A model generated the notes under the pieces. It was not told the DNA's origin. It saw nothing but the letters and a program-made list of their open reading frames with translations, and did no database searches. This document shows positions 1 to 13,692 of a stretch of DNA of 64,000 nucleotides, one piece after another. The stretch is from assembly GCF_000315625.1 (NCBI RefSeq), contig NW_005434600.1, positions 157,755-221,754 of the forward strand, given 5' to 3'. Origin of the DNA: Guillardia theta CCMP2712. Taxonomy: Eukaryota; Protista; Cryptophyta. Within the stretch, counting starts at the first letter, position 1. Each line of letters starts with the position of its first letter. The translations under genes and the position numbers were made by a program.

Positions 1-141
1 TACTCCTCCTCCTCCTCCTCCTCCACTCCTACTCCACCTACTTCCTTCCCCTCCCGACCCCCCCCGACCCCCCCCCCCCCCCCCCGTCCCCCGCGCCCCT
101 TTCCCTTCCCCTCCCCTCATTCCCCTCCCATCCTCCTCTAC

Positions 142-590
142 CTGCAGAGATTTGGCTGGTTTCTTGCTTTTCTTTTCCTTGACTGCAGGAGGAGGAGCAG
201 GAGGAGGAGGGAGTCCCTGAGGTAGGATCGTGAGCAGCAACCAGCATGCCTCTACCTCTTACCAGGCCAGGAGGAGGAGGAGGAGGAGGCAAAGAACCGT
301 CGGCGGATGGAAGAGGAGGCAGAGGAGGAAGAGGAGGATCAGAAGGAGGAACAGAGCTGTTCTCGCCCTCCTCCACAGTGTCCTCCTTGGGGTGGGAGGA
401 AGCAGTGTCTGCATCCTTGGAGAAGAATGAATGATCCTGGTTGGCCGAGACAAGTCAGACAGAAAGACGGACAGAGGGGAGGAAATGGGTTGCAGGAACG
501 AAAGCAGAAGAACAGCAGCAGAAGAAGCGGATAGAGCAGCGGCAGAGACGGGAGCGAGAGCAAGCAGGAGCAGATGCAGGAACAGGCATG

Positions 591-650
<60 letters not shown>

Positions 651-3600
651 GTCACGAGGTCACCGGAGGGATCGCAATCAGCTTCGCGTCATTCTTGAGT
701 TCTTCCCCGCAGGTCAAGAGCTCACGGAGGAAAGTCTGAAGGTCAGCGAAGAATTGACCTGCATGACAAGAAGTGAGAAGAGAGGAGGAAAGTGGAGGAG
801 AACAGGACAGGCAAGGACAGGACGGGAGAGGAGACGACGGAGAGGAGCAGAGCAGAGCAGGTCAGAGCAGGGCAGGGCAGAGCAGGGCAGGGCAGGGCAG
901 GGCAGGGCAGAGCAGAGCAAAGAAAAATGGAAAGGATGAGAGGGGAGGAGGATAAGCTTCAAGGGATCATGCAGGGACGAAAATCCATGAGGCCTCTTGA
1001 CAGCCACACTTGTCAATCCATAGCTTCTGCTCTTGCAACCTAAACCTCCTCCTCCCCCTCCCTCGCCGGCCTCCTCCTCCCCCTCCTCCTACTCCTCCTC
1101 CTCCTCCTCCTCCTCCTCCTCCTCCTCCTCTTCCAACTCCTACTTCTCCCCCTCATCTCCCATTCCTCCACATTCACCTGCATTGAATTTTCCCGAGTCT
1201 TCCACAAAATATGCAGCCACCTTCGAATATCCTGTCAGAATCCATCCTTCCTCTCTCCCTCCTCCTGCTCCTCCTCTGCTCCTCTGCTCCTCTGCTCCTC
1301 TGCTCCTCTGCTCCTCTGCTCCTCTGCTCCTCTGCTCCTCTGCTCCTGCTCTTGCCCTCCTTCCCCTCCTCCTCTTGCCCTCCTTCCCAGCCTCCGCTTG
1401 ACTTCCTCTGCATCTCTTCTCCCATTCTCTCCTCCCCATCCCCCTATCCTCCTCCTCCTTCACCTGCGCATGCTCCTGCTGCATCCGAGAAAGATCATCT
1501 CCCATCTTCGTCACTTCCTCTGCTGCGCTCGACAGAAACTCGCCCATCTTCTCCATGAACTTGCGCACATGGCCCCTCTCCTCCTCCTCCTCCATCTTCT
1601 CCTCCACCTTCCCCAGGTTGGCCACCGTAGCCTGAGCCCCAGCACACGCCGTGCTGACCTCCTTGACCTCAGTGACGAGGAACTCGAACGAGATCTTCGT
1701 CGTCTCGTCGATCTTCCTCTTCAGCTCCTGCAGCTCCTCCTCCGCCCCCTCCCTCTTGCTCCTCAGCACGTGCATCATGTAGTGCAGCAGGTTCCCCCTC
1801 CTGTTCGACAGCTTGTTCCCTGCCAGCAGCGACGAGCTCTGGAACGTGAAGCCCAGCGCTCCTCCTAGCATGTGGCCCTCGTTGATGAAGTTGCCGATCG
1901 TCAGACCGAGCAGGAACACTTCACGAAGAGCAGGACAGCTCCTCACGCTAACGGCGCAGTCGATCGCTTGCCCCAGCTTCCCTCCTATCTCCTCCTTCCT
2001 CACGTGAAACTCCTCCCGGAACAGCATCGCTCCGATCCAGTCCTGCGGGAAGGGGAGCGCTCCCAGCTTCAGCAGGAACTGCTCTGCAGGCCCCAACTTC
2101 GCGCTCTCTCCCTTGCTCTGCTTGAGGTACGCTTGCAGAGTCTTCTCCTCGTCAGCGGTGGGCAGCATGCTCTTGAGCGACAGCAGCTTGTCCATGTCCA
2201 GCACCTCCATGTCCATCTCGAGAATCGCACGGCAGATCTCGTCCTGGGAGCAGCGGAACTGAGCGAGGGCGATGCCGACGTTCTGCGCTCGTTTCATGTC
2301 GAGGAGCGAGACGAACTTGCTCGGCTTCTGCTGCTTCCTCGCCGTCTTCTTCTTCTTCTTCTCGGCCTTAGGGTCCTCACACAGCAGCGCCTCCAGCTCC
2401 TTCTCCTCCAGGCCAAACGTCGTCAGCGAGCTCTTGCCTCGCACCTCGTGCCATAGGGCAGGAGCGACGCACTTCATCGGAGGAACCTTCTTCCAGTGCA
2501 GCATCTTCAGCGCAGGAGCATGCTTCCTCATCCGCAGCGCCATGGGGTTGCTCCCTCCCATCCCAGGGGGAGGAGGCGGCGGCAAGAGTCCTCCTGGGGG
2601 GGGCGGGGGAGGAGGAGGCCCTAGTCCGCCCAGTGGAGGAGGAGGAGGAGGAGGCGGAACTCCAGGAGGAAGAGGAGGGGCAGGAGGAGCAGGAGGGAGG
2701 CCTTGGGCGATCGGAGGGGCAGAAGCCTCAGGTATAGGAAGAGGCCTCCCTTTGCCCTCATCCTGGTCCTCCCTTTGCCCTTCCCCGCTCACTCGCCCCT
2801 TGTCCGACGCCTCCTTGAGCTTCTGCGACTGCCTGTAGCTCTCCAGCTTGCTCCTCGACGCAGAGGATGGCTTGTAGCTCCCTTCCTTCCTCTCCACCTC
2901 CTTCCTCTCCTCCGCTGCCTCCCCCTTCTCTCCTCCTGCCTGCTGCGACACCCTCCTCCTCTCCGCCTCTTTCCCTTCGCCTCCCTCCTCCTCCTCGTCG
3001 TTGTCCTTGAACAACGTGTGGATCTGGTACGCCCGCTCCACATCGTTGTTGGTCCTCTGCAGAGCAAACGCGGCGACCTTAGGAGGGACGTCTCGTTCCT
3101 CCAGCAGCTCCACGAGCCTCGGCTCCGGGTTGATCGCGTGGAGAGCAGAGAGATCCTCAAGGCAGCTCCCGCAGCGGAGGATGAGACTGAGCTCCTCCTC
3201 CTGGAACTTCTCCACTTCCTCGCTGCTCTCGTTGGCAACTACGTCGACTGTCATGTCGGTAGGAACGACAACGTTCTGTGGAGCGCCTGTGAGACAAGAC
3301 AAGACAAGACAAGACAAGACAAGACAAGACAAGACAATGTGAAGTCAAGTCAACCACGTCTGAAGGCTAGACACGGCACAGGAATGAGCTCCAACATCAG
3401 TCACCCTCACATCTCAAACCGCAAGTCAGACATCAAGCAAGGGAGCGACAAGGTAAAGAAACAGACAAGCAGCAGGGGCAGCAGCAAGTCAACTCACCGG
3501 CAAGATGTCAAGGTCGCTTCTGTGCAGCCTGAAGGGTCCGGGATGGACGAAGCCAGTGTTGAACGTGTACCGGAAGATGATGTCCTTGTCCACAGTCTCG

Positions 3601-6600
3601 TCGTTGTACTCCCCATCGCCAAGGCCGGGAAGGTTCTCCTCTCTCAGCTGCTTCTTCAAGGCCACGTGATAGCACGTGATGATCACGTCTCCTAGGACCG
3701 TCACCCCAGCTCGCCCGTCCGACCCTGTGAAGTGGAACTTGATCACTTCCCCCTCCTTGGAATCCACAAACACGGGAGCGATCCCCGCCTTGAGCGTGCT
3801 GTAGATCACGCTGCCGTTGTTGTGAACCTCCATGATGGGTCTACAGCCCTTGACCTCTCTCCCAGTCTTGGGGTCCGTCATCGCCTCGAAGATCAGGTTG
3901 CTGTTGGTGTCCTGGACCCCTTGGTTGCTGCGGTGGAGGAACAAGCGGTGCAGCACGAGCGGCTTCGTGTTGAACAAGCCAGCCCTGATGTTGACATCGA
4001 AGTCATTCACCAGCCGCTTGAACGACGGCTTCGTCCTCATGTCGTCCACCTCGTCCCTTGAGATGTTGCGCTTCATCGCAAACTCGTCGAGCGCGGCTTG
4101 TGCTGACGTCATCGACGAGACTTGGTTGGACCCCACGGCTGACCCGAACATCTCCAGGTCCTTGTTGAACTGGTCAAGGGCCTTGAAGCACGAGTACACC
4201 AGCGCTGCTCGCGTCCGCCCGTTGAGCGTCATGTACCGCTTCTTGCTCAGGTCCTCGTACTCGTTGTACAGCAGCACAACCACATGCTGCTTGTCCAGCG
4301 ACAGCCAGTACCTCATCCCATGGCAAAGCTTCAGCATGAAGGCGAGGCCTGGGATCGATTCCTCCAGGTCGTAGCTGACGACCTGGTGGTCCAGGGTAGA
4401 GTAGTCGAACTTGTCCTCGCCCGACAGGTTCCACACGAGGAACTTCTCCCCCATCTCCTCCCTCAGCTTCCGAATGGCGTCCTCCATCCCCTTGTTCTTG
4501 GGCGTCTTTCCGTACTTCCAGGGGAACCCCATGATGTACAGCCGGTCCTCCATCCTCACCAGCTCGTCGTGCAGTTGTGGCATCTTCTCCAGCAGGGAGA
4601 TGGCAGGGTCGAGCTTGTTGTTGCATCGCTTCAGCACCCATGCTCGCACCTTCTCGTTCACGTCTGATCGCTTGGGGTTCTGTTCGCGCTGAAGGCGGAG
4701 GTACTCGGAGAGGAGGAAGAGATACTCGTTGGAGGGCTTCACGATGTGCATCTCGCTCATGCCGATCAAGCCGCTGAAGTCCGAAGGGAAGATGAAGTCC
4801 TCTACCCCCGGCCGCTCCTCCACCTGGAGCTCAGCTGGGCTCTCCTTGTCCTGAGCTGGGGGGCTGAGGATCAGGTCGACCTTGAAGTCCGACGACATGG
4901 AGACAGGGTTGTTGTGAGAGATCGGCATGCTGGGATACTCGCAGGCGAAGTCAAGGTCCTCTTTCTTCAGCCTCTGCATCTGTCCTCCGTTGGATAGGAA
5001 GCCGGTGTGAAAGCAGATGCGGAAGATGGGGATCTTGTCCGACTTGGGTTTTGTCAGCTTCTCCGTCTGTTTGTTGATACGGTTTGCCTCTTGCTTCACG
5101 TAGCCGTGCCGCACGTGATAGCAGGAGATCACAACATCGCCCCACAGTAGCGCATTCAGCGACTCAAACACCATGATCTCGTCCTTGCTGGAGAAAGAAG
5201 TAAACTTCGCATCTCGGATGTCGGTGTATTTTGCTGCAGTGCAGCAACGTCAGATGTCGTGTCGACACATCAGCATAGCAAGGAGGCTTCCATCACCTTG
5301 CAGATCGATCTTCTCTCCATTGCACAAGATCTCCAAGATCTTCTCGCATGTCAACCCCAGCAACCCCAGCACAGGCTCTCACCGGTCGGCACTGGCTGCT
5401 GTCGAAGAAAGCAGGCACAATGTGAACAAAGATGCAGTCGAGCATCACGGGCTTTGTGTTGGAGAAGCCATGCTTTCGGATGTCATCGATGTAGCTGTAA
5501 TACCTGACATGTACACTCTCAGATCCCACACCCATGATGACACATTGTCATGGTCTCACAGAGACAGCGAAGGCACAAAGACGTTCGAGATGTCGCCTAG
5601 CTGCGAGCAGCAGACAAGTCAGAAGCTGCTTCATACGTCAAGCAGCAAGCTTGTCCCACCAGATCCACCACCCGATCCAGCCCCTCGCGCGCATCTTTCG
5701 TCTCTCCCGAGTACGCCAGGTACGCGCTGACGAGAAAAGCGACGCGGCTCTCGATGTTGATCGACATGGTGTCCTTGTCGACGTGGGGAGAGCTCAACCC
5801 GTCCTCATAGAGAATGACGGCGATGTTGAGCGCGTCTTGCTTCAGCCAGTAGCTGAGATACAGCACGTCAATCCCTCCACCCAAGCATGAGGTCGTCTAC
5901 CGTATCATGTTGCAGATGCTGAAGGTGAACTGCATGGAGGGGATGTACTCGGGGAAGTCTCGTACATCAAGGACCTGAGAAAGCGCTCCATGAGATAGAA
6001 CAAGCTTGAAAGTCAAAGATGTCTTGACCGTGACTACCAACAGCTTTCTTTCTACTCAACAAACACCAAAGGCAAGTGCAACACATCAAGATAAGCTTCA
6101 ACCACTCACTTGCTCCTCCAAATCCTTCGTCTCAAACAGACGCTTGTCTGTGGCAGTCAGGTTCCACACCAAGTAATGCCCAGCATGCTCCTGTCTCAGA
6201 CTTCACCCCCGCACTGTCACAACTCCCGCCCACTCACTTCGTTCAGTCTATTGATCGATCTAGCAAGCCTGGAAGAAGCGAACAGCATCAGACGAAGCAA
6301 TCAAGCACATGTGACTCGCCTCGATTTGTCATCGCCGATAGGCAGCAAGACGAGGTTCTTTGTGATGTATGTGAGGTACCCTGATGACAAGCTGCTCAGC
6401 ACATGCTCATGCTGCAACTACTCCTCGTCCTCACCCAAGTCCTCGCCTCGACCAGCGATTGCATCGTAAGCTGCTGACCAGACCCTGCTGGCGATGGTGG
6501 CTTCATTGAAGACAAGGTGTCAGACTATCAGCATCACGATGGCACAAAGAGTCTGCAGGGTCAGACCTTTCTTGGTGCCTCGATGACGCGGGAGGGGTGG

Positions 6601-6618
6601 CGATTCAGACTTGTTCAT
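142..6618 (-). CDS. Formin, (PTEN-like + C2 + UBA-like)x2 - FH1 - FH2 - Pro-rich tail; multi-exon, last exon lies outside the window (<1)
   Basis: ORF 1140..3332 has poly-Pro FH1 and FH2 hallmarks (LKMLHWKKV, LLDMKRAQNVGIAL, LGPAEQFL, LTIGNFINEG...ALGF). ORF 3489..5174 has two PTEN-type C2 segments (GDVVISCYH...IFRICFHTGF; GDVIITCYH...IFRYTFNTGF) and a PTEN-like segment (DRLYIMGFP, FLVWNLS). Upstream exons at 5300-6618 encode a first PTEN-like segment. ATG at 6618 is tentative. Confidence 0.9.
594..648. repeat. (CAG)n microsatellite in a formin intron
   Basis: Direct reading of the sequence. Confidence 0.95.
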
Positions 6619-7726
6619 GGTCGGTGATCTCAGGGCTCATCGCCTAGTGGGCACATTCCCCTGACAGCTCCAAGAGAAACGCCAGCTCGTGAAGAAGCGA
6701 AGGCTGAAAGATGTCGGCCAGGCTCAACTAGCCAGCAGCGCTCAGTTAGGTTCTACAAAGATTCCTGGCTTACAAATGCTACCTCCTCCTCCTCCTCGCT
6801 CTTTGGATATGATGAGTGACTAGACTATCGATATCACGTTCAAGTTCGCTTCTTCTTGACCGCTCTCCTCCTCTCCTTCCTTCATCCCTCCCTCTCCCTT
6901 CCCCTCTGCCGCGCTGCCTCCCTCCTGTTGCTGAGTCTGCATTGATCCCCCAGAAATGTCATAAAAACATTATATCAAAACTAGCTGGCTGATCTGGTGC
7001 TGCCCATGGACCCACCCGTTGCGAGCCAAGTACCCTACCTTGTTACTGCTTCCAAAATTGGCACTTCTGTCTGACCCCACTCCACCCCCCACCCCCCCGC
7101 CCTCCCCCCACCCCCACCCCCCACCCCACCCCACAAGGACCATCCTTCCTTTTGAAATGAATACTACCGACAACATTACCACCCACCCCATCTTCTCTGA
7201 AGTTGGCGGTGAAACGGTGAATAACGGACTCGAATTGGGGATCAGCGCTACACCATGCCGCCCGGCCAACAGCGGCTCCACATCTCCTCCCTCTCTGAGA
7301 GGTCACCCGGTGACTTGAACGGGTGACTTCCTGGCGGCACTCACAGTTCTGCTGGCACTCCGAGCCGGCCCGGTCCACCGCCGCCGCCAGGTAAGCTAAT
7401 AACTGATTACTCGGACCCGGGCGGGCCCGGGATGGTCCGATCGCCTGTGCGCAACGGTTAAGTGAAGGTGTAATGATTACTGAGTTTAAAAGTATTATAC
7501 ACGGCCTCTTAACAACTGATACTACCGTAAGCAAAAGAGACCCCTATTGTTGACTTCGGTCTTTTAAATTGTACGGTTGCTGGAATAACTGATACTACTG
7601 GTAGTGATCACCCTATTTTTGACTTTGTCTGACGGCCCTCAGCTGAGCGTCAGCTGCATGCGGCTAGGGGGGGGGGGCAGAGGAAGCGTCAGACACAGAG
7701 TGAGTGAAGGAGGGAGCGGGAAGAGA

Positions 7727-8491
7727 ATGCTGCGAGACTCCGTCATCTTGATCGTACTTGGAGGTTGGTTGTGTCCGCAAGCCGAGGCCGGGTGTGGAAA
7801 CTGCTCGTTCGATTTCTCGGAATCAATTTTGTCGAGAAAGGGAATGTGTAATGGTGACTGCGGGATTGATGTTGCGTGGGGAACCTATCGGAGAAGTTTG
7901 CGTTTGAATTCCTGCGAACCACCCATTCAGAGCATAGCGGATGGGGCAGTCTTCGATGGGCTCTGGAACTTACAGGATCTATTGCTGCAGTACAACAGCC
8001 TCTACAGTCTTCCAGCAGGAGTCTTCGACGGGCTCTCAAGCTTGGAGGGGCTATTTCTCCAAAACAACCAACTGACGAGTCTGCCGGTTGGAATCTTCGA
8101 CAAGCTTACGAACCTGCAGCATCTACTGCTTGGAGACAACAACCTGGTAAGTTTGCCATCAGGAGTCTTTGACAGGCTTTCAAACTTACAGACGCTAAGT
8201 CTTCTGAACAACAAGATTTCCTGCATTCCTTCCGATGCTTTCGCAAATCTTTCGTCCCTGAACATTTTGCAACTCAGAGGGAACAACCTTCCGTGCTATC
8301 ATCTGTCTTGGCCAGCTTTCACTCAATATGATGCAAATCTCCAGCCGTGCCAAAACGAAACTGTTTGCAATGACAACGGAGAAAGCTCTTCCGCGTTTGC
8401 TCTGCAGAGGACCAACAACGATGTAGAGCGGGCGTACCAGATCCACACGTTGTTCAAGGACAACGATGACGAGGAGGATGGAGGCGTATAG
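7727..8491 (+). CDS. Intronless typical-class (24-aa) leucine-rich repeat protein with predicted signal peptide; C-terminus derived from the formin and truncated by an insertion
   Basis: MLRDSVILIVLGGWLCPQAEAG leader, Cys-rich N-cap, repeats such as LEGLFLQNNQLTSLPVGIFDKLTN and LQHLLLGDNNLVSLPSGVFDRLSN. Last ~30 aa (AFALQRTNNDVERAYQIHTLFKDND) are identical to the formin. Confidence 0.85.
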   Translation: MLRDSVILIVLGGWLCPQAEAGCGNCSFDFSESILSRKGMCNGDCGIDVAWGTYRRSLRLNSCEPPIQSIADGAVFDGLWNLQDLLLQYNSLYSLPAGVFDGLSSLEGLFLQNNQLTSLPVGIFDKLTNLQHLLLGDNNLVSLPSGVFDRLSNLQTLSLLNNKISCIPSDAFANLSSLNILQLRGNNLPCYHLSWPAFTQYDANLQPCQNETVCNDNGESSSAFALQRTNNDVERAYQIHTLFKDNDDEEDGGV

Positions 8492-9581
8492 AGATTTCCA
8501 GTGGCACTCTCCTCACACACGAAGCAAAGATGCGTGACAACTCTGATGACGATGATTGCCAATATCTATGATGGTGAAGATAGCGATCACCGATGGTCGC
8601 GCCGAGGGATGATAGTATCAGGAAACAGAGAACTAGCAGAGATGACGATAGATGTTCAAGCTTGTTCACTTCAAGCAATCAAGTCTACCAGAGACACGTC
8701 ACCTCGTTCTCGTTTCCCCTTCCTGTCGATGCAAGCGCGGCCCTTCTTCCTCTTCCTCGACCCCTCAAATAGGCCCTGCCTAGTCCTAGGAACTACTACT
8801 ACCGGTACCTTGCTCTTCTAACCAGCGATATGATTCCTCGACCGGTCCAGGTCCTGGTTCCATAGCTTGGGGGTCTCCTGAGAACGAGTCATAGGCTTGA
8901 CATGACGAGATCTTCGATTCGCATCCAACGCTCTCTGTCAAGATCCCATAGCTGCTCTCTTGATAGATCCCATAGCTGCTCTCTTGATAGATCCCATAGC
9001 TGCTCTCTTGATAGATCCCATAGCTGCTCTCTTGATAGATCCCATAGCTGCTCTCTTGATAGATCCCATAGCTGCTCTCTTGATAGATCCCATAGCTGCT
9101 CTCTTGACAGATCCCATAGCTGCTCTCTTGATAGATCCCATAGCTGCTCTCTTGATAGATCCCATAGCTGCTCTCTTGACAGATCCCATAGCTGCTCTCT
9201 TGACAGATCCCATAGCTGCTCTCTTGACAGATCCCATAGCTGCTCTCTTGACGGATCCCGTATGTCCCTGTAATCTGCTGAGAGGTGTTCCCGTGTCTTC
9301 CTCACGTGCCCGCCGGTAGAATAATTCTGATTTATTGGCGGGCTGCCATATCCTGTCACCTGCTGTCCTGTAGAGGTCTGATATAAGCTGATTCGCTTAT
9401 CGCCTGCTGCCTCCGATCGTTCCTAGGTTCTTACTGTCTTCTTCATGGTCCTCCTACGTCGTCCCTATCGAAGCTGTTGCTGTCCTCTCCGTGGGTACTT
9501 CCTAACCCTCTGTGCACTTGAGCCACATCGACTGCCTGGCCTAGTCTGATATGAAGCTTGCTGCCATCAGTTGCTGCAACA
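8487..9581. mobile_element. 1,095-bp insertion with 5-bp TSD (AGGCG), probable solo LTR
   Basis: AGGCG at 8482-8486 and 9582-9586. The flanks join seamlessly into sequence colinear with the formin at ~2960-3000. Ends are TATAG...GCAACA (TG..CA-like, one mismatch). No transposase or RT ORF inside. Confidence 0.75.
8941..9252. repeat. 24-bp tandem repeat x13 (AGATCCCATAGCTGCTCTCTTGA[T/C])
   Basis: 13 near-perfect contiguous units with no spacers. Confidence 0.97.
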
Positions 9582-10350
9582 AGGCGCAGGGAGAGAGGCG
9601 GAGAGGAGGAGGGTGTCGCAGCAGGCAGGAGGAGAGAAGGGGGAGGCAGCGGAGGAGAGGAAGGAGGTGGAGAGGAAGGAAGGGAGCTACAAGCCATCCT
9701 CTGCGTCGAGGAGCAAGCTGGAGAGCTACAGGCAGTCGCAGAAGCTCAAGGAGGCGTCGGACAAGGGGCGAGTGAGCGGGGAAGGGCAAAGGCTGGACCA
9801 GGATGAGGGCAAAGGGAGGCCTCTTCCTATACCTGAGGCTTCTGCCCCTCCAATCGCCCAAGGCCTCTCCCCCGCTCGTCCTGCACCACCTTTGAACAGA
9901 CCCCGGCTTTCTCCTGCTGCTGCTACTGCTCCACGAGGCGTCCCCGCGTATCAGATTGCTACTGATCCTTTCTCGATGGCAAATCTGTTTCCTCCTCCTC
10001 CTGCTCCTACTCTTGCAGTCAAGGAAAGAAAGCAAGAAACCAGCCAAATCTCTGCAGGTAGAGGAGGAGGGGAGGGGAATGAGGAGAGGGGAAGAGAAGG
10101 GCGCGGGGGGCGGGGGGCGGGAAGGAAGAATTCGGATGGATGGAGAGGAGGGGAGAGGAAAGGGGAGGGGAGGGGAAAGGGGAGTGGGGGGAGAATCGGG
10201 ATGAGAGAGGAGAGGAGAGGAGAGGAGAGGAGAGGAGGATATGGGATTGATGAGTTATTCCAGGAAATCGCGCAGGAGAGGATGGCGAAAATCGCTGCGA
10301 GAAAAGCAGCAGAGGGAGGGAACAAGGGAGGAGGGGAGGAAGATTTGTAA
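9582..10350 (+). pseudogene. Inverted partial duplicate of the formin (linker + C-terminal tail, FH1/FH2 deleted); 3' half of the LRR-formin chimera
   Basis: 9582-9868 is nearly identical to the reverse complement of ~2698-2983. ~9990-10075 matches the reverse complement of ~125-210, including an intron donor (CTGCAG|GTAGAG), with 2 nt deleted relative to the parent. Confidence 0.85.
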
Positions 10351-10834
10351 ATGCCACTGAGATGAGCTAACAAGACAATAAGACCAACAAGACTATGGAA
10401 GGATCGAGCACGAGAAGGATGTATGGATAGCACAATGCAGATGAGGAGAAATTGCGAGCTGATGAGGAAATTCAGTTGGATATCAGAGGTGTGAGGGGCG
10501 AAAGGCACAAAGGGAGGAGGAGAAGTTGGGAGGTTGGGAATGTAAGGAGGGACAGAAAGGGAGAGATCCGAAAGATCCGAAAGAGGAGGAGAGGACAGGG
10601 GAAGAATCACCCAGCAAGGTAGATGTGGGGAGGGGAGGTACTATCCAGCAAGGTAGGAGATCAAGTTGGCTAGTGGCAACCACTTCATTGAGCATCATGT
10701 GGGTACGTAGCGTCTAGAAAGCTGCATTGTTGGCATGCGACGCTTTCTCGTCATGCTTCCACCACTGGTCGCTGCGCCCGGCGGTGCCGTCGAAGGACTT
10801 GGCAGACCATCTGGTGGCTAGATGAGAGAGATTC

Positions 10835-11004
10835 GAGGAGGAGGAGGAGGAGGAGGAGGAGGAGGAGGAGGAGGAGGAGGAGGAGGAGGAGGAGGGAGAG
10901 GGAGAGGGAGAGGGAGAGGGAGAGGAGGAGGAGGAGGAGGGAGAGGAGGAGGGAGAGGAGGAGGGAGAGGAGGAGGGAGAGGAGGAGGAGGAGGAGGAGG
11001 AGGA
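10835..11004. repeat. (GGA)n/(GGGAGA)n purine tract
   Basis: Direct reading of the sequence. Confidence 0.9.
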
Positions 11005-11385
11005 CAAATGAGGGGACAAGGGGTTCTCAGCAAGAGAATTCTAGGAAGGGAAACGGCGGAAAACAAGGAGGGAGGGAGGCACAAGGGTCAACCAGTTGTC
11101 ATTCTTGCCGACAACGTCAATCATGAGTTCAAGGCTAAAATCGACCTTCGTGAAGGAGCTCAACCAGTTCAGAGCAAGCCTTATCCGATTCCAATCGCAC
11201 TTGAGGGAGACCTCCAGGAGGCTTTATCGTATATGCCGCAGAGGGATATGATCGAAGTCTCATCGTCAGCCTGCTCTAGTTCTGTGATCTTTGTGAAGAA
11301 GAAGGATAGAACTGCGCCGCTCCCACACGTTACTCAGATGCCCTTGCCACGACGACGTAAAGTCTTCTTCACTTCGTAGAAGTCA

Positions 11386-11553
11386 CCATCAGCTGTAACA
11401 ATGGGAGCAGGAGGTTGTGAAACAACATCCACAGTAGGATCCCATCAGCTGTAACAATGGGAGCAGGAGGTTGTGAAACAACATCCACAGTAGGATCCCA
11501 TCAGCTGTAACAATGGGAGCAGGAGGTTGTGAAACAACATCCACAGTAGGATC
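11386..11553. repeat. 56-bp tandem repeat x3 inside the integrase-chromodomain linker
   Basis: CCATCAGCTGTAACAATGGGAGCAGGAGGTTGTGAAACAACATCCACAGTAGGATC at 11386, 11442 and 11498. Confidence 0.95.
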
Positions 11554-13692
11554 CCCAAAGTAGTAAGGACGCAACGTGGAAACATTGTAATGGGCGTCTT
11601 TGAGCGGACGCAGCCGTAGAGGAAAAGACAAACGCACTGTACTGTCAGACGGCTTGAACAAAAGCCGATGTTCTAGTAGACTCAAATCCTTGGTAGAAAG
11701 CATAACAAAGTCACCAACATTGAAATCAGCCGATCGACGAGCCTTATTCATCTGCGCCTCACGTTTCTCAGCCGCCAAGACAAGAGCGTCGCGAGCAATG
11801 TCCAAGCTCTGTAGGAGATCATCACGAGTTTCGTCAACATCTTCATGAGCATGCTGAGGAGAGAGGTTGATCACTGTCCGCACGTCCCGTTGGTACAGGA
11901 TCTGAAATGAGGTAAGGTCAGCAGAATTTCGTACAGGAGAGTTCCATGTCTTTTTCAAGTGAACCAGATTGGTATCCCAATCCCTTTCATCATGTTTCAA
12001 ACAGAAAACGCTATTAGAACTTTCAACTCGTCCTTGACTCTGAGTAAGGCCAACACAATCGCCAAACATCCTCGCTCACGTAAGGAATAGTTCATCTGTG
12101 CCGGGTTCAATCTTTTGCTGTAGCAGCCCACAGAGAGAAATGTTTGTACGACTGGTCGTTGCATGAGAGCTGCCGCAATCGCCTTATCACTTGTATTGAC
12201 AAACAGATGAGAATGTAACTCTGGATTGAAAATTTGAAGCACTGGAGCATCCACAAACGCCTTCTTCAACTGATCTGGGGACGCTTGGCATGCCTCGTCC
12301 CACACAAACTTGACATTCTTCTTTACAATGTTGGAACTATTGTCGTTGCTGTGGGATGAGATGTTGCAGAGAGGGGTAGACGCAGAACTTGCACTTGTCC
12401 ATGCAACAATCTCCGAACTTGTGGCAGAGATCGTCACATCAGCATGTTCCCGCACTCTCTCCGCGTAATGGCTGAGGCCTTTAAACATCGGGGGAGCTGT
12501 CCGAAGCAGTGGAAGGTCAAGGCCCCCAAGATGATTGTTGTCTGCTCCATGCTGCCCTGAGGAGCGTGTCGTCCCCCCTGGGTGTGGTATTGGTTGAGAG
12601 CAATGGGCACACAACGGAGGAAGGTCATGTAGAAATTTGTCAATTGCTGTTTGCTAGAAGGTACCAAGGTTTGTACTCTCCACTACAGAAGTTGAAAAGA
12701 CCCTTGAATGGTGTTGGCTTGCGAAGGAGGAAGGCGCTGCAGGATGCTAGGAACACGTGTCTGGCAATGGGGGAGAAGAGAAAACTTGGAGGCAGCGCTT
12801 GCAATCTTGATTGGCAGGATGCGGCGAAAGAATCTTTGGAGTCATCAGACTGCACTGGCTGACAGAAAGCACCAGAACTGCTTTGACGAATGATTGGAAA
12901 TGAGTTTTCTGGTCGGATGAATCGTGTCTTCTCGGATGATCGGAGGAGGGATGATTATACATGGTTGTGAGTTGGGCAGCTCGAGGACAGGCAACTTCCA
13001 CCAAGCCTGATGTCGTAGTTGGTTCTCCAACTCGACAACCTTCAACAGGAGCGAATCCTTTGCTGCATACCATGCAAGGACAAAGGTACTGCAGGAGCAA
13101 CTTCAGCTGCTGCCTGGAGGTCTTGAATTCGCCAACGACAGCGTCATTCCACGACGCTTCGTCGCAGTCGCAGGAGTACGCTCACGCACGACACCGTCAC
13201 TCCTCAACGCCTGGTGCAAAAGTCAACTCGACGAGCCGAGTTGCGATAGCAAGGATGGCACCGCCTTGGATACTACGGCTCAGAGCCGGAAGGATACGAA
13301 AATCCGCCAGTTGCATCACCCAGGCGTCTGGTTTCAAGGCGGTCCGAAAGCACAAAAGCTGGAAATAGGCAAGGGGTGCAGGCGCAACGAGCGCGCAGAG
13401 GGCCGCTGCTTTAACTGCGGGCAGCGAGGACAAGAAGCGGCAAGAACCCGTATCATCACACGAGAGCTGGCCTCACAGGTGATGAGGATACCTACTCGCC
13501 TGCATCAGACATGGAGCCGTCCCATGACCAGCACACTAAGGCGCCGTCAAAGGACCACGGTAAGCGCCCGTACGGTAACGAGGATAGCACCAGCAGCAGG
13601 TGCTTTCAAATGAACATCAACTTCGCATCCCAGGTACGATCGCTGGCCATGTCGAAGGCACAAGAGGATGTGGAGGACAAATTCTCGCGTTG

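What the first reader, a model, noticed from the sequence alone, without database searches (positions are those of the whole stretch)
7727..10350. Reconstructable chimeric gene: secreted LRR ectodomain fused in frame to an inverted, FH1/FH2-deleted copy of the neighbouring formin
Seen: from 8391 the LRR ORF switches to sequence matching the reverse complement of formin ~2977-3073. After the insertion, 9582-9868 continues that match (~2698-2983). Removing 8487-9581 plus one TSD copy gives ...GAT GGA GGC GCA GGG AGA GAG GCG GAG AGG..., one continuous frame: SP-LRR-...AFALQRTNNDVERAYQIHTLFKDNDDEEDGGAGREAERRRVSQQ...-Pro-rich-tail. The copy jumps from the start of FH1 (QGLPPAPP) to the C-terminal Pro-rich exon (GLPPPPAPP), dropping FH1-FH2. 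It keeps a formin intron, so it arose at DNA level, not by retroposition. Inference: this is a young domain-shuffling event that gave an LRR-family member a new tail from an adjacent gene, then truncated it by a TE. It may show how this LRR family diversifies.
Basis: partly seen in the sequence, partly recalled or inferred. Interest (0 to 1): 0.85.

Follow-up and report, generated by a model that had tools for sequence, protein, structure and literature searches.

The report
Truncated LRR gene fused to formin scrap
In the alga Guillardia theta, a stretch of about 4 kb was copied backwards and replaced the end of a secreted leucine-rich-repeat (LRR) gene, joining it in frame to a piece of the neighbouring formin gene that holds no complete domain; the fusion is real and probably transcribed, but it looks like a decaying by-product and not a new working gene.

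Summary
8391-8486 and 9582-9891 are the reverse complement of formin 3073-2673 at about 96% identity. 8487-9581 is an insertion with a perfect 5-bp duplication (AGGCG), and taking it out restores one reading frame. An independent DNA run bridges every junction, so this is not a misassembly.

- The formin is the donor. A Hanusia phi orthologue has the same collinear sequence, and no other LRR paralogue carries this tail.
- The copy is larger than described. It runs from 8391 to 11111 and also mirrors the 3' end of the gene that converges on the formin. It ends at a breakpoint inside a truncated retrotransposon pol gene.
- It replaced the conserved ~80-aa C-terminal domain that 15 of 17 LRR paralogue loci keep, so the family does not diversify by capturing tails.
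- The captured piece starts inside a UBA/CUE-like helix and contains no complete domain.
- One copied formin exon carries two 1-nt deletions.
- Substitutions fit neutrality (pN/pS 0.57, p = 0.42).
- The insertion is an antisense Ty1/copia solo LTR. It stops the ORF 32 codons after the fusion point.

RNA contigs from two studies cover the LRR part and reach 30 nt past the junction.

Verdict: a young rearrangement scar carrying an expressed, truncated LRR gene. This scan had already noted the solo LTR (s1-434981).

The parts
7654..7726 (+). Probable 5' UTR of the LRR gene
   Evidence: RNA contigs from two studies start at 7670 (X5) and 7654 (X7). Depth is zero at 7300-7567.
7727..8390 (+). Coding part derived from the LRR gene: signal peptide, Cys-rich N-cap, LRRs and Cys-rich C-cap. 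This is the 5' part of an old family member.
   Evidence: Pfam LRR_8 at E 1.7e-30. It is 53-55% identical to complete paralogues up to ...CNDNGESSS and then diverges. RNA depth is about 12 in X5 and X7.
8391..8486 (+). Formin-derived segment A (reverse complement of 3073-2978). It begins in the last helix of a UBA/CUE-like region and is in frame with the LRR ORF.
   Evidence: blastn 95.8%. Weak CUE/UBA_4 hits on the parental stretch, E 0.007-0.02, below the Pfam cut-offs. DNA contig X1 record 1 spans 7300-8466.
8482..8486 (.). Left copy of the 5-bp target-site duplication AGGCG
   Evidence: Read directly from the sequence. The parent has a single copy at 2978-2982.
8487..9581 (-). Solo LTR (1095 bp) of a Ty1/copia family, antisense to the LRR gene. 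The in-frame stop TAG at 8489-8491 now ends the ORF.
   Evidence: It is 80-85% identical to LTR pairs that flank 9.2-kb elements in C4 and C251. Its ends coincide with their LTR ends. The family has TGTTG..CAACA termini and 5-bp duplications. The polyprotein lies on the opposite strand, with rve before RVT_2. X1 contigs bridge both ends.
8941..9259 (.). Tandem array of 13.3 x 24 bp inside the LTR
   Evidence: TRF, 98% matches.
9582..9586 (.). Right copy of the target-site duplication AGGCG
9587..9867 (+). Formin-derived segment B (reverse complement of 2977-2697): the charged linker up to the start of FH1
   Evidence: Four differences in 281 nt. The genome holds only one other copy, the parent.
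9868..9955 (+). Degenerate Pro-rich junction stretch where FH1-FH2 (parent about 2690 to about 240) is missing
   Evidence: 64% identity to FH1. Scores are not above shuffles for 9881-9960. X1 contig 9822-10027 bridges it.
9956..10018 (+). Copy of the 3' end of a formin intron (parent about 240-178), including the pyrimidine tract and the AG acceptor
   Evidence: Alignment. RNA reads differ from the genomic text upstream of the acceptor (loose ends at 10029).
10019..10057 (+). Copy of a small formin exon, with two 1-nt deletions relative to the parent (a frameshift)
   Evidence: Alignment. Parental-type contigs and reads carry the extra A after 10024 and after 10028 (tables 4 and 7).
10058..10263 (+). 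Copy of a formin intron (GT..AG)
   Evidence: 17 spliced X19 RNA reads skip 206 nt here (table 5). The same reads carry parental letters, with 10359 G>A in 11 of 11.
10264..10350 (+). Copy of the formin's last coding exon. The parental original lies in the 2240-N gap left of the window.
   Evidence: The assembly has no other match.
10671..10809 (-). Copy of the last exon of the highly expressed gene that converges on the formin
   Evidence: X5 and X7 RNA contigs match with 0 mismatches. They then continue into the parental penultimate exon (L021 7656-7685), not into the copy's version.
10810..11111 (-). Copy of that gene's last intron and about 18 nt of its penultimate exon. This is the outer end of the mirrored segment.
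   Evidence: 11023-11111 is the reverse complement of L021 7755-7667 at 90%.
11112..11367 (+). 5'-truncated retrotransposon pol fragment that abuts the copy (breakpoint, not an insertion end)
   Evidence: It is 87% identical to a copy in C151 whose polyprotein ORF continues upstream of the matching point.
2697..3073 (-). Parental formin segment (UBA/CUE-like helix, linker, start of FH1)
   Evidence: The Hanusia phi orthologue fragment P0109 is collinear with it.
6..240 (-). Parental formin 3' segment (end of an intron, the small exon, start of the next intron)

Best explanation
A single complex rearrangement happened in the Guillardia lineage after it split from Hanusia. It copied at least about 4 kb lying 5.3 kb to the left: from the middle of the PTEN-C2/UBA-like/FH1-FH2 formin gene, through its 3' end, into the 3' end of the convergent neighbour gene. 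The copy was placed in inverted orientation between a break inside an old secreted LRR gene (8390|8391) and a break inside a retrotransposon pol gene (11111|11112). Whatever lay between those two breaks was lost, including the LRR gene's conserved C-terminal domain.

I infer the mechanism to be two template switches during replication or break repair (FoSTeS/MMBIR or SDSA type). This produced an inverted duplication coupled to a deletion.

By chance (about 1 in 3 for frame) the LRR ORF continued in frame into a formin fragment that contains no complete domain. The FH1-FH2 part of the copy was either skipped in the same event or deleted later between Pro-rich tracts.

The copy then drifted. It gained two frameshifting 1-nt deletions in a small exon and substitutions that look neutral. 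A Ty1/copia element inserted into it and collapsed to a solo LTR, which now ends the ORF 32 codons after the junction.

The LRR promoter still fires at a low, condition-dependent level. The cell therefore makes an mRNA for signal peptide + LRR ectodomain + a 33-residue foreign tail. The most likely status is a truncated, decaying family member and not an adaptive chimera.

Shown: the structure, the direction of transfer, the DNA-level origin, the loss of the C-terminal domain, the nature of the insertion, and that the locus is transcribed with junction-spanning sequence present in RNA runs (one continuous molecule and its strand are inferred).
Inferred: the mechanism, the order of the internal deletion, the strand of the RNA, and the lack of function.
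For: Structure:
- Searches give the alignments.
- Searches show that the mirror extends to 11111 and includes the neighbour gene's 3' end.
- Searches show that the right end is a breakpoint inside a pol ORF.

Not a misassembly: X1 DNA contigs bridge 8391, 8487, 9581 and 9868-9990. At least two DNA-like studies hold about 80% of the stretch's words.

Direction:
- The Hanusia phi protein P0109 is collinear with the formin across the UBA-like region, linker and FH1.
- The tail occurs in the genome only at the formin and here.

Loss of the C-terminal domain:
- The paralogues are single-exon ORFs of 328-350 aa that end in a conserved domain of about 80 aa.
- That domain is absent from the whole 64-kb window.
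- It lies just downstream of 15 of 17 LRR loci.

Decay and neutrality:
- pN/pS is 0.57, with 6 nonsynonymous and 3 synonymous changes, p = 0.42 against neutrality.
- One exon has two 1-nt deletions.
- No Pfam domain is found in the tail ORF.

Insertion: solo LTR of a copia family.

Expression:
- RNA contigs cover 7670-8420 in X5 and 7654-8420 in X7 at depth about 12.
- X5 contig 8437-8864 carries copy-specific bases plus LTR sequence.
- Depth is zero upstream of 7568 and at 9310-9979.
- Both runs contain spliced contigs, so they are RNA.
Against: - The LRR part is fully intact and transcribed, and the fusion is in frame, so a functional truncated or chimeric protein cannot be excluded.
- The frame stays open from 9571 to 10350. 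That has P about 0.005 under a first-order Markov model and about 0.06 given the actual stop triplets, which is a mild hint of past coding.
- The RNA contigs reach only 30 letters past 8391. This is one short of the tool's bridging rule, and it is where a k=31 graph merges with the formin mRNA path. Contigs also carry no strand.
- The raw-read RNA run X19 shows the LRR gene almost silent.
- Divergence is uneven: 0 of 139 nt, about 2.4%, and 8-18% in different parts. The age is therefore uncertain, and gene conversion between the arms may have blurred it.
- The parental 3' end lies in an N gap, so the mirror cannot be checked base by base there.
Confidence: 0.7

Rival explanations
1. The fusion was a productive domain-shuffling event: before the TE arrived, the locus encoded a working secreted LRR protein with a new, long formin-derived tail. 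This would be the way the LRR family diversifies.
For: - The junction is in frame, and the frame stays open to 10350 once the LTR and one duplication copy are removed.
- The locus is transcribed.
- The copy arose at DNA level.
Against: - The tail begins mid-helix in a UBA/CUE-like region and has no intact domain.
- The downstream ORF runs through two copied introns and an exon with two deletions.
- pN/pS cannot be told from 1.
- The fusion removed the family's conserved C-terminal domain.
- No other paralogue carries a captured tail. 15 of 17 loci keep the standard domain.
- The other end of the copy is a random break in a TE.
Confidence: 0.12
2. The present product (signal peptide, LRR ectodomain and a 33-residue acidic tail, without the C-terminal domain) is a functional soluble variant of the family. 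It would be kept because loss of the C-terminal module changes its localisation or partners. The TE-imposed stop would then be harmless or even part of the gene.
For: - The LRR ORF is intact and all cap cysteines are conserved.
- RNA contigs from two independent studies have similar 5' ends.
- The X5 contig runs from the copy into the LTR, as expected if the LTR supplies the 3' end.
Against: - The rearrangement is too young for an intact ORF to mean anything (about 2.4% divergence).
- Expression is low: depth about 12 against 33-514 for the formin, and near zero in X19.
- The C-terminal domain is conserved in nearly all paralogues and in at least 69 ORFs of the genome, which suggests it is needed.
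Confidence: 0.15
3. Assembly artefact: the LRR-formin and TE junctions are chimeric joins made by the assembler in a repeat-rich region with gaps.
For: - The assembly has N gaps nearby: 2240 N immediately left of the window and 100-N gaps inside it.
- The region is rich in low-complexity and TE sequence.
Against: - Contigs built from the reads of run X1 (2021, not among the 2011 runs; which run the assembly was built from is not on record) cover 7300-8466, 8437-8964, 9440-9623, 9594-9851 and 9822-10027 with no mismatches.
- Junction-spanning sequence also appears in RNA runs X5 and X7.
Confidence: 0.02
4. Reverse direction: the formin acquired the shared sequence from the LRR locus.
For: None found.
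Against: - The Hanusia phi formin fragment has the same collinear sequence.
- In the formin the shared stretch is embedded in a complete UBA-like region followed by linker and FH1.
- LRR paralogues have an unrelated sequence at that position.
Confidence: 0.01

Closest known systems
DNA-level chimeric (fusion) genes and pseudogenes made by segmental duplication, as surveyed for example in rice (PMC3673630, title and abstract as listed; paper not opened) and, from my own knowledge, Drosophila Sdic-type fusions
   Same: - Parts of two or more neighbouring genes are juxtaposed by a DNA duplication.
- Introns are retained.
- The recipient's promoter drives a transcript across an in-frame junction.
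   Different: - The recipient lost its own conserved C-terminal domain.
- The captured part has no complete domain.
- There is no sign of selection.
- The ORF is already interrupted by an LTR.
- It therefore sits at the 'failed or decaying' end of the spectrum.
Inverted duplication with spacer, coupled to a deletion, as produced by replication template switching (FoSTeS/MMBIR) or ectopic break repair (own knowledge)
   Same: - Two inverted arms are separated by a 5.3-kb spacer (3074-8390).
- Both ends of the copy are breakpoints inside unrelated sequences.
- Material at the insertion site was lost.
- There is an internal skip with a short, unassignable junction stretch.
   Different: - The mechanism is inferred from the geometry alone.
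- Microhomology at the junctions is at most 1-2 nt, and it cannot be judged without the ancestral sequence.
Solo LTRs of Ty1/copia retrotransposons
   Same: - A 5-bp target duplication.
- Ends that coincide with the LTR ends of full-length elements of the family.
- No internal region.
   Different: - It is only 80-85% identical to the family's young LTRs, whose pairs are 100% identical.
- Its 5' terminus reads TATAG where the family has TGTTG.
- It carries a longer 24-bp array (13 units).
Processed retrocopy fusions (jingwei type; own knowledge)
   Same: A foreign coding piece is recruited by a host gene.
   Different: - The copy keeps at least two introns and flanking non-coding DNA of two genes.
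- It has no poly(A) remnant.
- It is therefore not RNA-mediated.

Membership tests
DNA-level chimeric gene | Two identifiable parental sequences joined at a defined junction | tested here: met
   LRR-paralogue similarity ends at 8391 and formin identity (96%) starts at 8391.
DNA-level chimeric gene | Donor introns or non-coding DNA retained (not a retrocopy) | tested here: met
   Spliced RNA reads of the parental type skip the homologue of 10058-10263. The copy also holds an intron and exon of the neighbour gene.
DNA-level chimeric gene | Continuous ORF across the junction | tested here: met
   The ORF is in frame at 8391, but it stops at 8489-8491, two codons into the LTR.
DNA-level chimeric gene | Transcription across the junction | tested here: inconclusive
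   - RNA contigs 7670-8420 and 7654-8420 contain every junction-spanning 31-mer, but only 30 letters lie beyond the junction.
- X5 contig 8437-8864 is copy-specific.
- The strand is not known, and X19 is nearly silent.
DNA-level chimeric gene | Evidence of function or selection on the chimeric product | tested here: inconclusive
   pN/pS is 0.57 from 9 changes, p = 0.42. There are frameshifts in a copied exon. No population data are available.
Guillardia secreted LRR family with conserved C-terminal domain | Signal peptide, Cys-rich caps and LRRs | tested here: met
   Pfam LRR_8 at E 1.7e-30. The alignment shows conserved cap cysteines. The signal peptide was judged by eye only.
Guillardia secreted LRR family with conserved C-terminal domain | C-terminal domain of about 80 aa (NWT.YPDYL.C ... 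FCYVYDE..F.PW) | tested here: not met
   tblastn of two paralogues finds no such domain anywhere in the window. It is present at 15 of 17 paralogue loci.
Formin (for the copy) | FH2 domain | tested here: not met
   Pfam finds nothing in the 9571-10347 ORF. The parental ORF has FH2 at E 4.7e-57. Parent 2672 to about 240 is missing from the copy.
UBA/CUE-like domain (in the captured tail) | Complete three-helix domain | tested here: not met
   The parental stretch gives only sub-threshold CUE/UBA_4 hits (E 0.007-0.02). These cover residues whose first part lies upstream of the breakpoint, so the copy holds only the last helix.
Ty1/copia solo LTR | Homology to LTR pairs of full-length elements, with ends that coincide | tested here: met
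   Full elements are L047 334-9489 and L048 310-9550.
Ty1/copia solo LTR | Family polyprotein with integrase before reverse transcriptase (RVT_2) | tested here: met
   rve at residues 993-1091 and RVT_2 at 1519-1752 of the 2015-aa ORF.
Ty1/copia solo LTR | 5-bp target-site duplication | tested here: met
   AGGCG here. The full elements have TTTAT and GTCTA.
Processed retrocopy | Intron-less, with a poly(A) tail | tested here: not met
   Introns are retained and there is no A-tract at the copy's end.

The most novel reading that the evidence does not exclude
The transcribed in-frame LRR-formin fusion could be a genuine newborn gene. It would encode a freely secreted LRR protein that escaped the family's C-terminal module, with the antisense solo LTR domesticated as its terminator. 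The patchy divergence between the two inverted arms (0% in some stretches, over 10% in others) would then reflect ongoing gene conversion between the formin and its copy. Such conversion could also feed mutations back into an essential cytoskeletal gene.
Probability: 0.1. Interest if true: 0.45.

Novelty: new member of a known kind. Interest (0 to 1): 0.27.

Why it matters
This is a clean case, validated against reads, of how a local inverted duplication with a deletion can truncate one gene and join it in frame to a piece of another. It comes from a cryptophyte, a lineage where such events have hardly been described. It shows the raw material of gene birth and also its usual fate, which is decay.

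There is a practical use as well. The copy preserves near-identical versions of the formin's last exon and of the neighbour gene's last exon. Both originals fall in an unassembled gap of the reference, so the copy can guide gap closure and gene-model repair. It also warns that short RNA reads from the parental genes will be laid wrongly on the copy.

Tried and rejected
- **Sequence left of window position 1.** I fetched it to follow the formin's 3' end. The adjacent 2240 bases read N, so the parental last exon could not be seen. It was inferred from RNA reads and from the copy.
- **Missing LRR 3' end.** I looked for it in the window and in the genome. There is no orphan copy near the locus. 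The only hit on the same contig lies 146 kb away, inside an unrelated 997-aa ORF.
- **Annotated or transcript-derived G. theta formin protein.** I searched for one to fix the exon structure. None appeared in the accessible length range; the best hit was 50% identical, from a metagenome.
- **Assigning 9881-9955 to FH1 or to the C-terminal Pro-rich exon.** Both alignments score within the range of shuffles.
- **Naming the family's C-terminal domain.** Pfam gives nothing, and the best atlas score is 0.88, below the level that counts.
- **Upstream exon text from RNA loose ends.** I searched the window for it. Only chance-level matches turned up, and the loose-end consensus was weak.
- **Literature.** Two searches on Guillardia LRR families, chimeric genes and retrotransposons found nothing specific.
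- **Empty-site allele.** No DNA joint 8486 to 9587 appears in X1. Contigs drop rare variants, so this is weak evidence.
- **Misassembly and reversed direction of transfer.** I considered both and rejected them (see the rival explanations).
Full report
**Organism and setting.** The window is G000:C74:157755-221754 of an 87.1-Mb assembly in 669 contigs. Protein hits name Guillardia theta, a cryptophyte alga (P0002). On the minus strand, from about 7000 down to position 1, lies a formin gene. It has PTEN-C2 (ORF 3489-5174, E 6e-16) and FH2 (ORF 1140-3332, E 5e-57). On the plus strand an ORF with ATG at 7727 encodes a signal-peptide-like start followed by leucine-rich repeats (LRR_8, E 2e-30).

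**Check of the observation.** blastn of 7600-11200 against 1-7500 gives three matches:
- 8391-8486 is the reverse complement of 3073-2978 at 95.8%.
- 9582-9891 is the reverse complement of 2982-2673 at 96.5%.
- 9991-10121 is the reverse complement of 210-76 at 92%. With gentler scoring this extends to 10193/6 at 82%.

The first two matches overlap by five parental bases, AGGCG. These bases flank the intervening 1095 bp as a perfect target-site duplication (8482-8486 and 9582-9586). Removing the insert and one duplication copy puts the LRR ORF and ORF 9571-10350 in one frame, and that frame is the formin's own.

It is not an assembly artefact. Contigs built from the reads of DNA run X1 (2021, not among the 2011 runs; which run the assembly was built from is not on record) cover 7300-8466, 8437-8964, 9440-9623, 9594-9851 and 9822-10027 without a mismatch. 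Runs of a second study hold about 79% of the stretch's words.

**What the LRR gene was.** A genome search with 7727-8486 finds about 17 paralogous loci. The best are 67-73% identical in DNA, and several matches end at query position 665-666, which is window 8391.

The two closest paralogues (L002 and L003) are intact single-exon ORFs of 328 and 350 aa. They have a signal peptide, a Cys-rich cap, LRRs and a second Cys-rich cap, then a short linker and a conserved C-terminal domain of about 80 aa. The window protein is 53-55% identical to them up to ...CNDNGESSS and then switches to formin text.

The C-terminal domain is nowhere in the 64-kb window. It lies directly downstream of 15 of the 17 LRR loci, and at least 69 ORFs of the genome end in it. 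The window gene is therefore an old, diverged family member that lost its normal end. The family does not show captured tails elsewhere.

**Direction of transfer.** A 206-aa Hanusia phi protein (P0109) is collinear with the G. theta formin from upstream of the breakpoint through the shared stretch, the charged linker and into FH1.
- The shared stretch is therefore ancestral in the formin.
- The G. theta copy is nearly identical to the G. theta formin in a linker where Hanusia differs widely, so the duplication is younger than that split.
- At one site (K in the parent, R in the copy, R in Hanusia) the parent changed and the copy did not. Both arms have evolved since the duplication.
- In the genome the linker occurs only twice, in the parent and in the copy.

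**The copy is larger than reported.**
- 11023-11111 matches the reverse complement of the sequence just left of the N gap that borders the window (L021 7755-7667, 90%).
- RNA contigs of X5 and X7 lie on 10671-10809 without a mismatch. They then continue with text that is the parental exon at L021 7656-7685, not the copy's version.
- So 10671-10809 copies the last exon of a highly expressed gene that converges on the formin, 10810-11093 copies its last intron, and 11094-11111 copies the end of its penultimate exon.

The mirrored segment thus runs from 8391 to 11111. It corresponds to the parent from 3073 leftwards across the formin's 3' end into the neighbour gene. Without the LTR the copy is about 1.6 kb, and the part of the formin it skips adds about 2.4 kb, which makes about 4 kb in all.

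At 11112 it meets a retrotransposon pol fragment. A fuller copy of that element in C151 has its polyprotein ORF continuing upstream of the matching point. The right end is therefore a break inside a TE and not a TE insertion site.

**Inferred mechanism.** There are two inverted arms with a 5.3-kb spacer. Both ends of the copy are breakpoints in unrelated sequences, and the material between those breakpoints is lost. This geometry fits an inverted duplication coupled to a deletion, made by template switching or by ectopic break repair. That mechanism is inferred and not shown. The in-frame LRR-formin join is then an accident with a prior of about one in three.

**Anatomy of the tail.**
- *Starting point.* The captured piece starts in what gives weak, sub-threshold CUE/UBA_4 hits in the parent (E 0.007-0.02). 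Only the last helix is present, followed by a charged linker.
- *8391-9867.* Copy and parent differ at 9 of 377 positions. Three changes are synonymous and six are nonsynonymous (five codons). pN/pS is 0.57, not different from neutrality (p = 0.42).
- *From 9868.* Identity collapses, and 9881-9955 cannot be assigned to FH1 or to the C-terminal Pro-rich exon above shuffle level. FH1-FH2 is absent.
- *From about 9956.* The copy follows the end of a formin intron, then a 39-nt exon, then a 206-nt intron and then the last coding exon. Seventeen spliced reads of the raw RNA run X19 skip exactly 10058-10263 (GT..AG). All 11 reads over 10359 carry A where the copy has G, and reads and contigs carry an extra A after 10024 and after 10028. 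These reads come from the parental mRNA.
- *What this shows.* The copy keeps introns, so it arose from DNA. Its small exon has two 1-nt deletions.
- *Open frame.* The frame 9868-10350 is open with P about 0.005 under a first-order Markov model. Given the seven stop triplets actually present in the other two frames, P is only about 0.06. This is suggestive at most.

**The insertion.** 8487-9581 matches dispersed repeats at 80-85%. Those repeats occur as direct pairs about 8.2 kb apart.

Two full elements were examined (L047 334-9489 and L048 310-9550). They have 924-926-bp LTRs that are 100% identical within each pair, termini TGTTG...CAACA, and 5-bp duplications (TTTAT and GTCTA). They carry a 2015-aa polyprotein with integrase before RVT_2, which is the Ty1/copia order.

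The window insert starts and ends at the homologous LTR ends and has no internal part, so it is a solo LTR. The polyprotein lies on the opposite strand, so the LTR is antisense to the LRR gene. It holds a 13.3 x 24-bp array. The LTR's TAG at 8489-8491 ends the ORF, which gives a predicted 254-aa product.

**Expression.**
- X5 (2018) and X7 (2014) are RNA, because they hold spliced contigs.
- Both have a contig from 7670 or 7654 to 8420 at depth about 12. Depth is zero at 7300-7567.
- The contigs end 30 letters past the junction. This is exactly where a k=31 graph merges with the more abundant formin mRNA path. All junction-spanning 31-mers are therefore present, although the tool's 31-letter bridging rule is missed by one letter.
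- In X5 a further contig (8437-8864, depth 6) joins copy-specific bases to the LTR. Nothing covers 9310-9979.
- In X19 (raw reads, about 6% of the run read) the LRR gene is nearly silent, while the formin and the neighbour gene are covered.
- I conclude that the LRR promoter drives a low-level, condition-dependent transcript that crosses the fusion point and ends in or near the LTR. The strand and the 3' end are inferred.

**Verdict.** The structural claim is right and now better defined. The evolutionary claim is mostly not supported. This is a young rearrangement scar in which an LRR gene lost its conserved C-terminal domain and acquired, in frame, a formin scrap without a complete domain. 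The copy has since picked up frameshifts, substitutions that look neutral, and an LTR. A functional truncated LRR protein cannot be excluded, but nothing argues for it beyond transcription and an ORF too young to have decayed.

**Comparison with known cases.** It belongs to the known class of DNA-level chimeric genes and pseudogenes. It is not a retrocopy, not a formin (no FH2) and not a full member of its LRR family (no C-terminal domain).

Noticed in passing
L021 7761-10000 (C74:155515-157754), immediately left of window position 1: A run of 2240 N hides the formin's last exon and 3' UTR and the last exon of the convergent neighbour gene. The inverted copy at window 10264-10809 holds near-identical versions. 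Spliced RNA reads and contigs show that both missing exons are expressed.
   Followed up: partly
L021 5353-6240 (+), exon end at L021 7656-7685, last exon copied at window 10671-10809 (-): The gene that converges on the formin is very highly expressed (contig depths 489-1140 in X5 and X7). It encodes an internally repeated motif (YEYHVPGGYLGGDNGVDSDYDAVTAPSEY, twice). Its function is not identified.
   Followed up: no
L002 2064-2330 and at least 69 places in G000: A conserved C-terminal domain of about 80 aa with four cysteines (NWT.YPDYL.C ... FCYVYDE..F.PW) ends ORFs of 280 to more than 3600 aa across the genome, including nearly all members of this LRR family. There is no Pfam match, and the best atlas score is 0.88. 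It may be a lineage-specific anchoring or sorting module.
   Followed up: partly
window 7727-8390 and paralogues: The best named database hits of the LRR ectodomain are lamprey and hagfish variable lymphocyte receptors (38-58% identity over the repeats). The likely cause is a shared LRR consensus with Cys-rich caps and not common descent.
   Followed up: no
L047 334-9489 (C4) and L048 310-9550 (C251): Full-length 9.2-kb Ty1/copia elements with 100% identical LTR pairs and an intact 2015-aa polyprotein ORF. The family has transposed very recently and may still be active.
   Followed up: partly
window 8391-9867 compared with 9991-11111: Divergence between the two inverted arms is patchy: 0 of 139 nt in the neighbour's exon, 0 of 192 nt at 9601-9792, five changes within about 36 nt around the LTR site, and 8-18% in introns. 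Gene conversion between the arms is one possible cause.
   Followed up: no
window 11112-12614: A jumble of retrotransposon fragments on both strands: a 5'-truncated pol piece on the plus strand at 11112-11367, and an RT-RNaseH fragment on the minus strand at 12000-12614 (RT_RNaseH_2, E 1.5e-19). A duplicated 50-nt motif lies around 11380-11500.
   Followed up: partly
window 10835-11004 and 1045-1170: Long (GAGGAG)n / (CCTCCT)n microsatellites produce many spurious blastn hits between the two regions. They are not part of the mirrored homology.
   Followed up: yes
window 2990-3260 (-) and 3489-5174 (-): Between PTEN-C2 and FH1 the formin carries a stretch with weak CUE/UBA-like similarity.
   Followed up: partly
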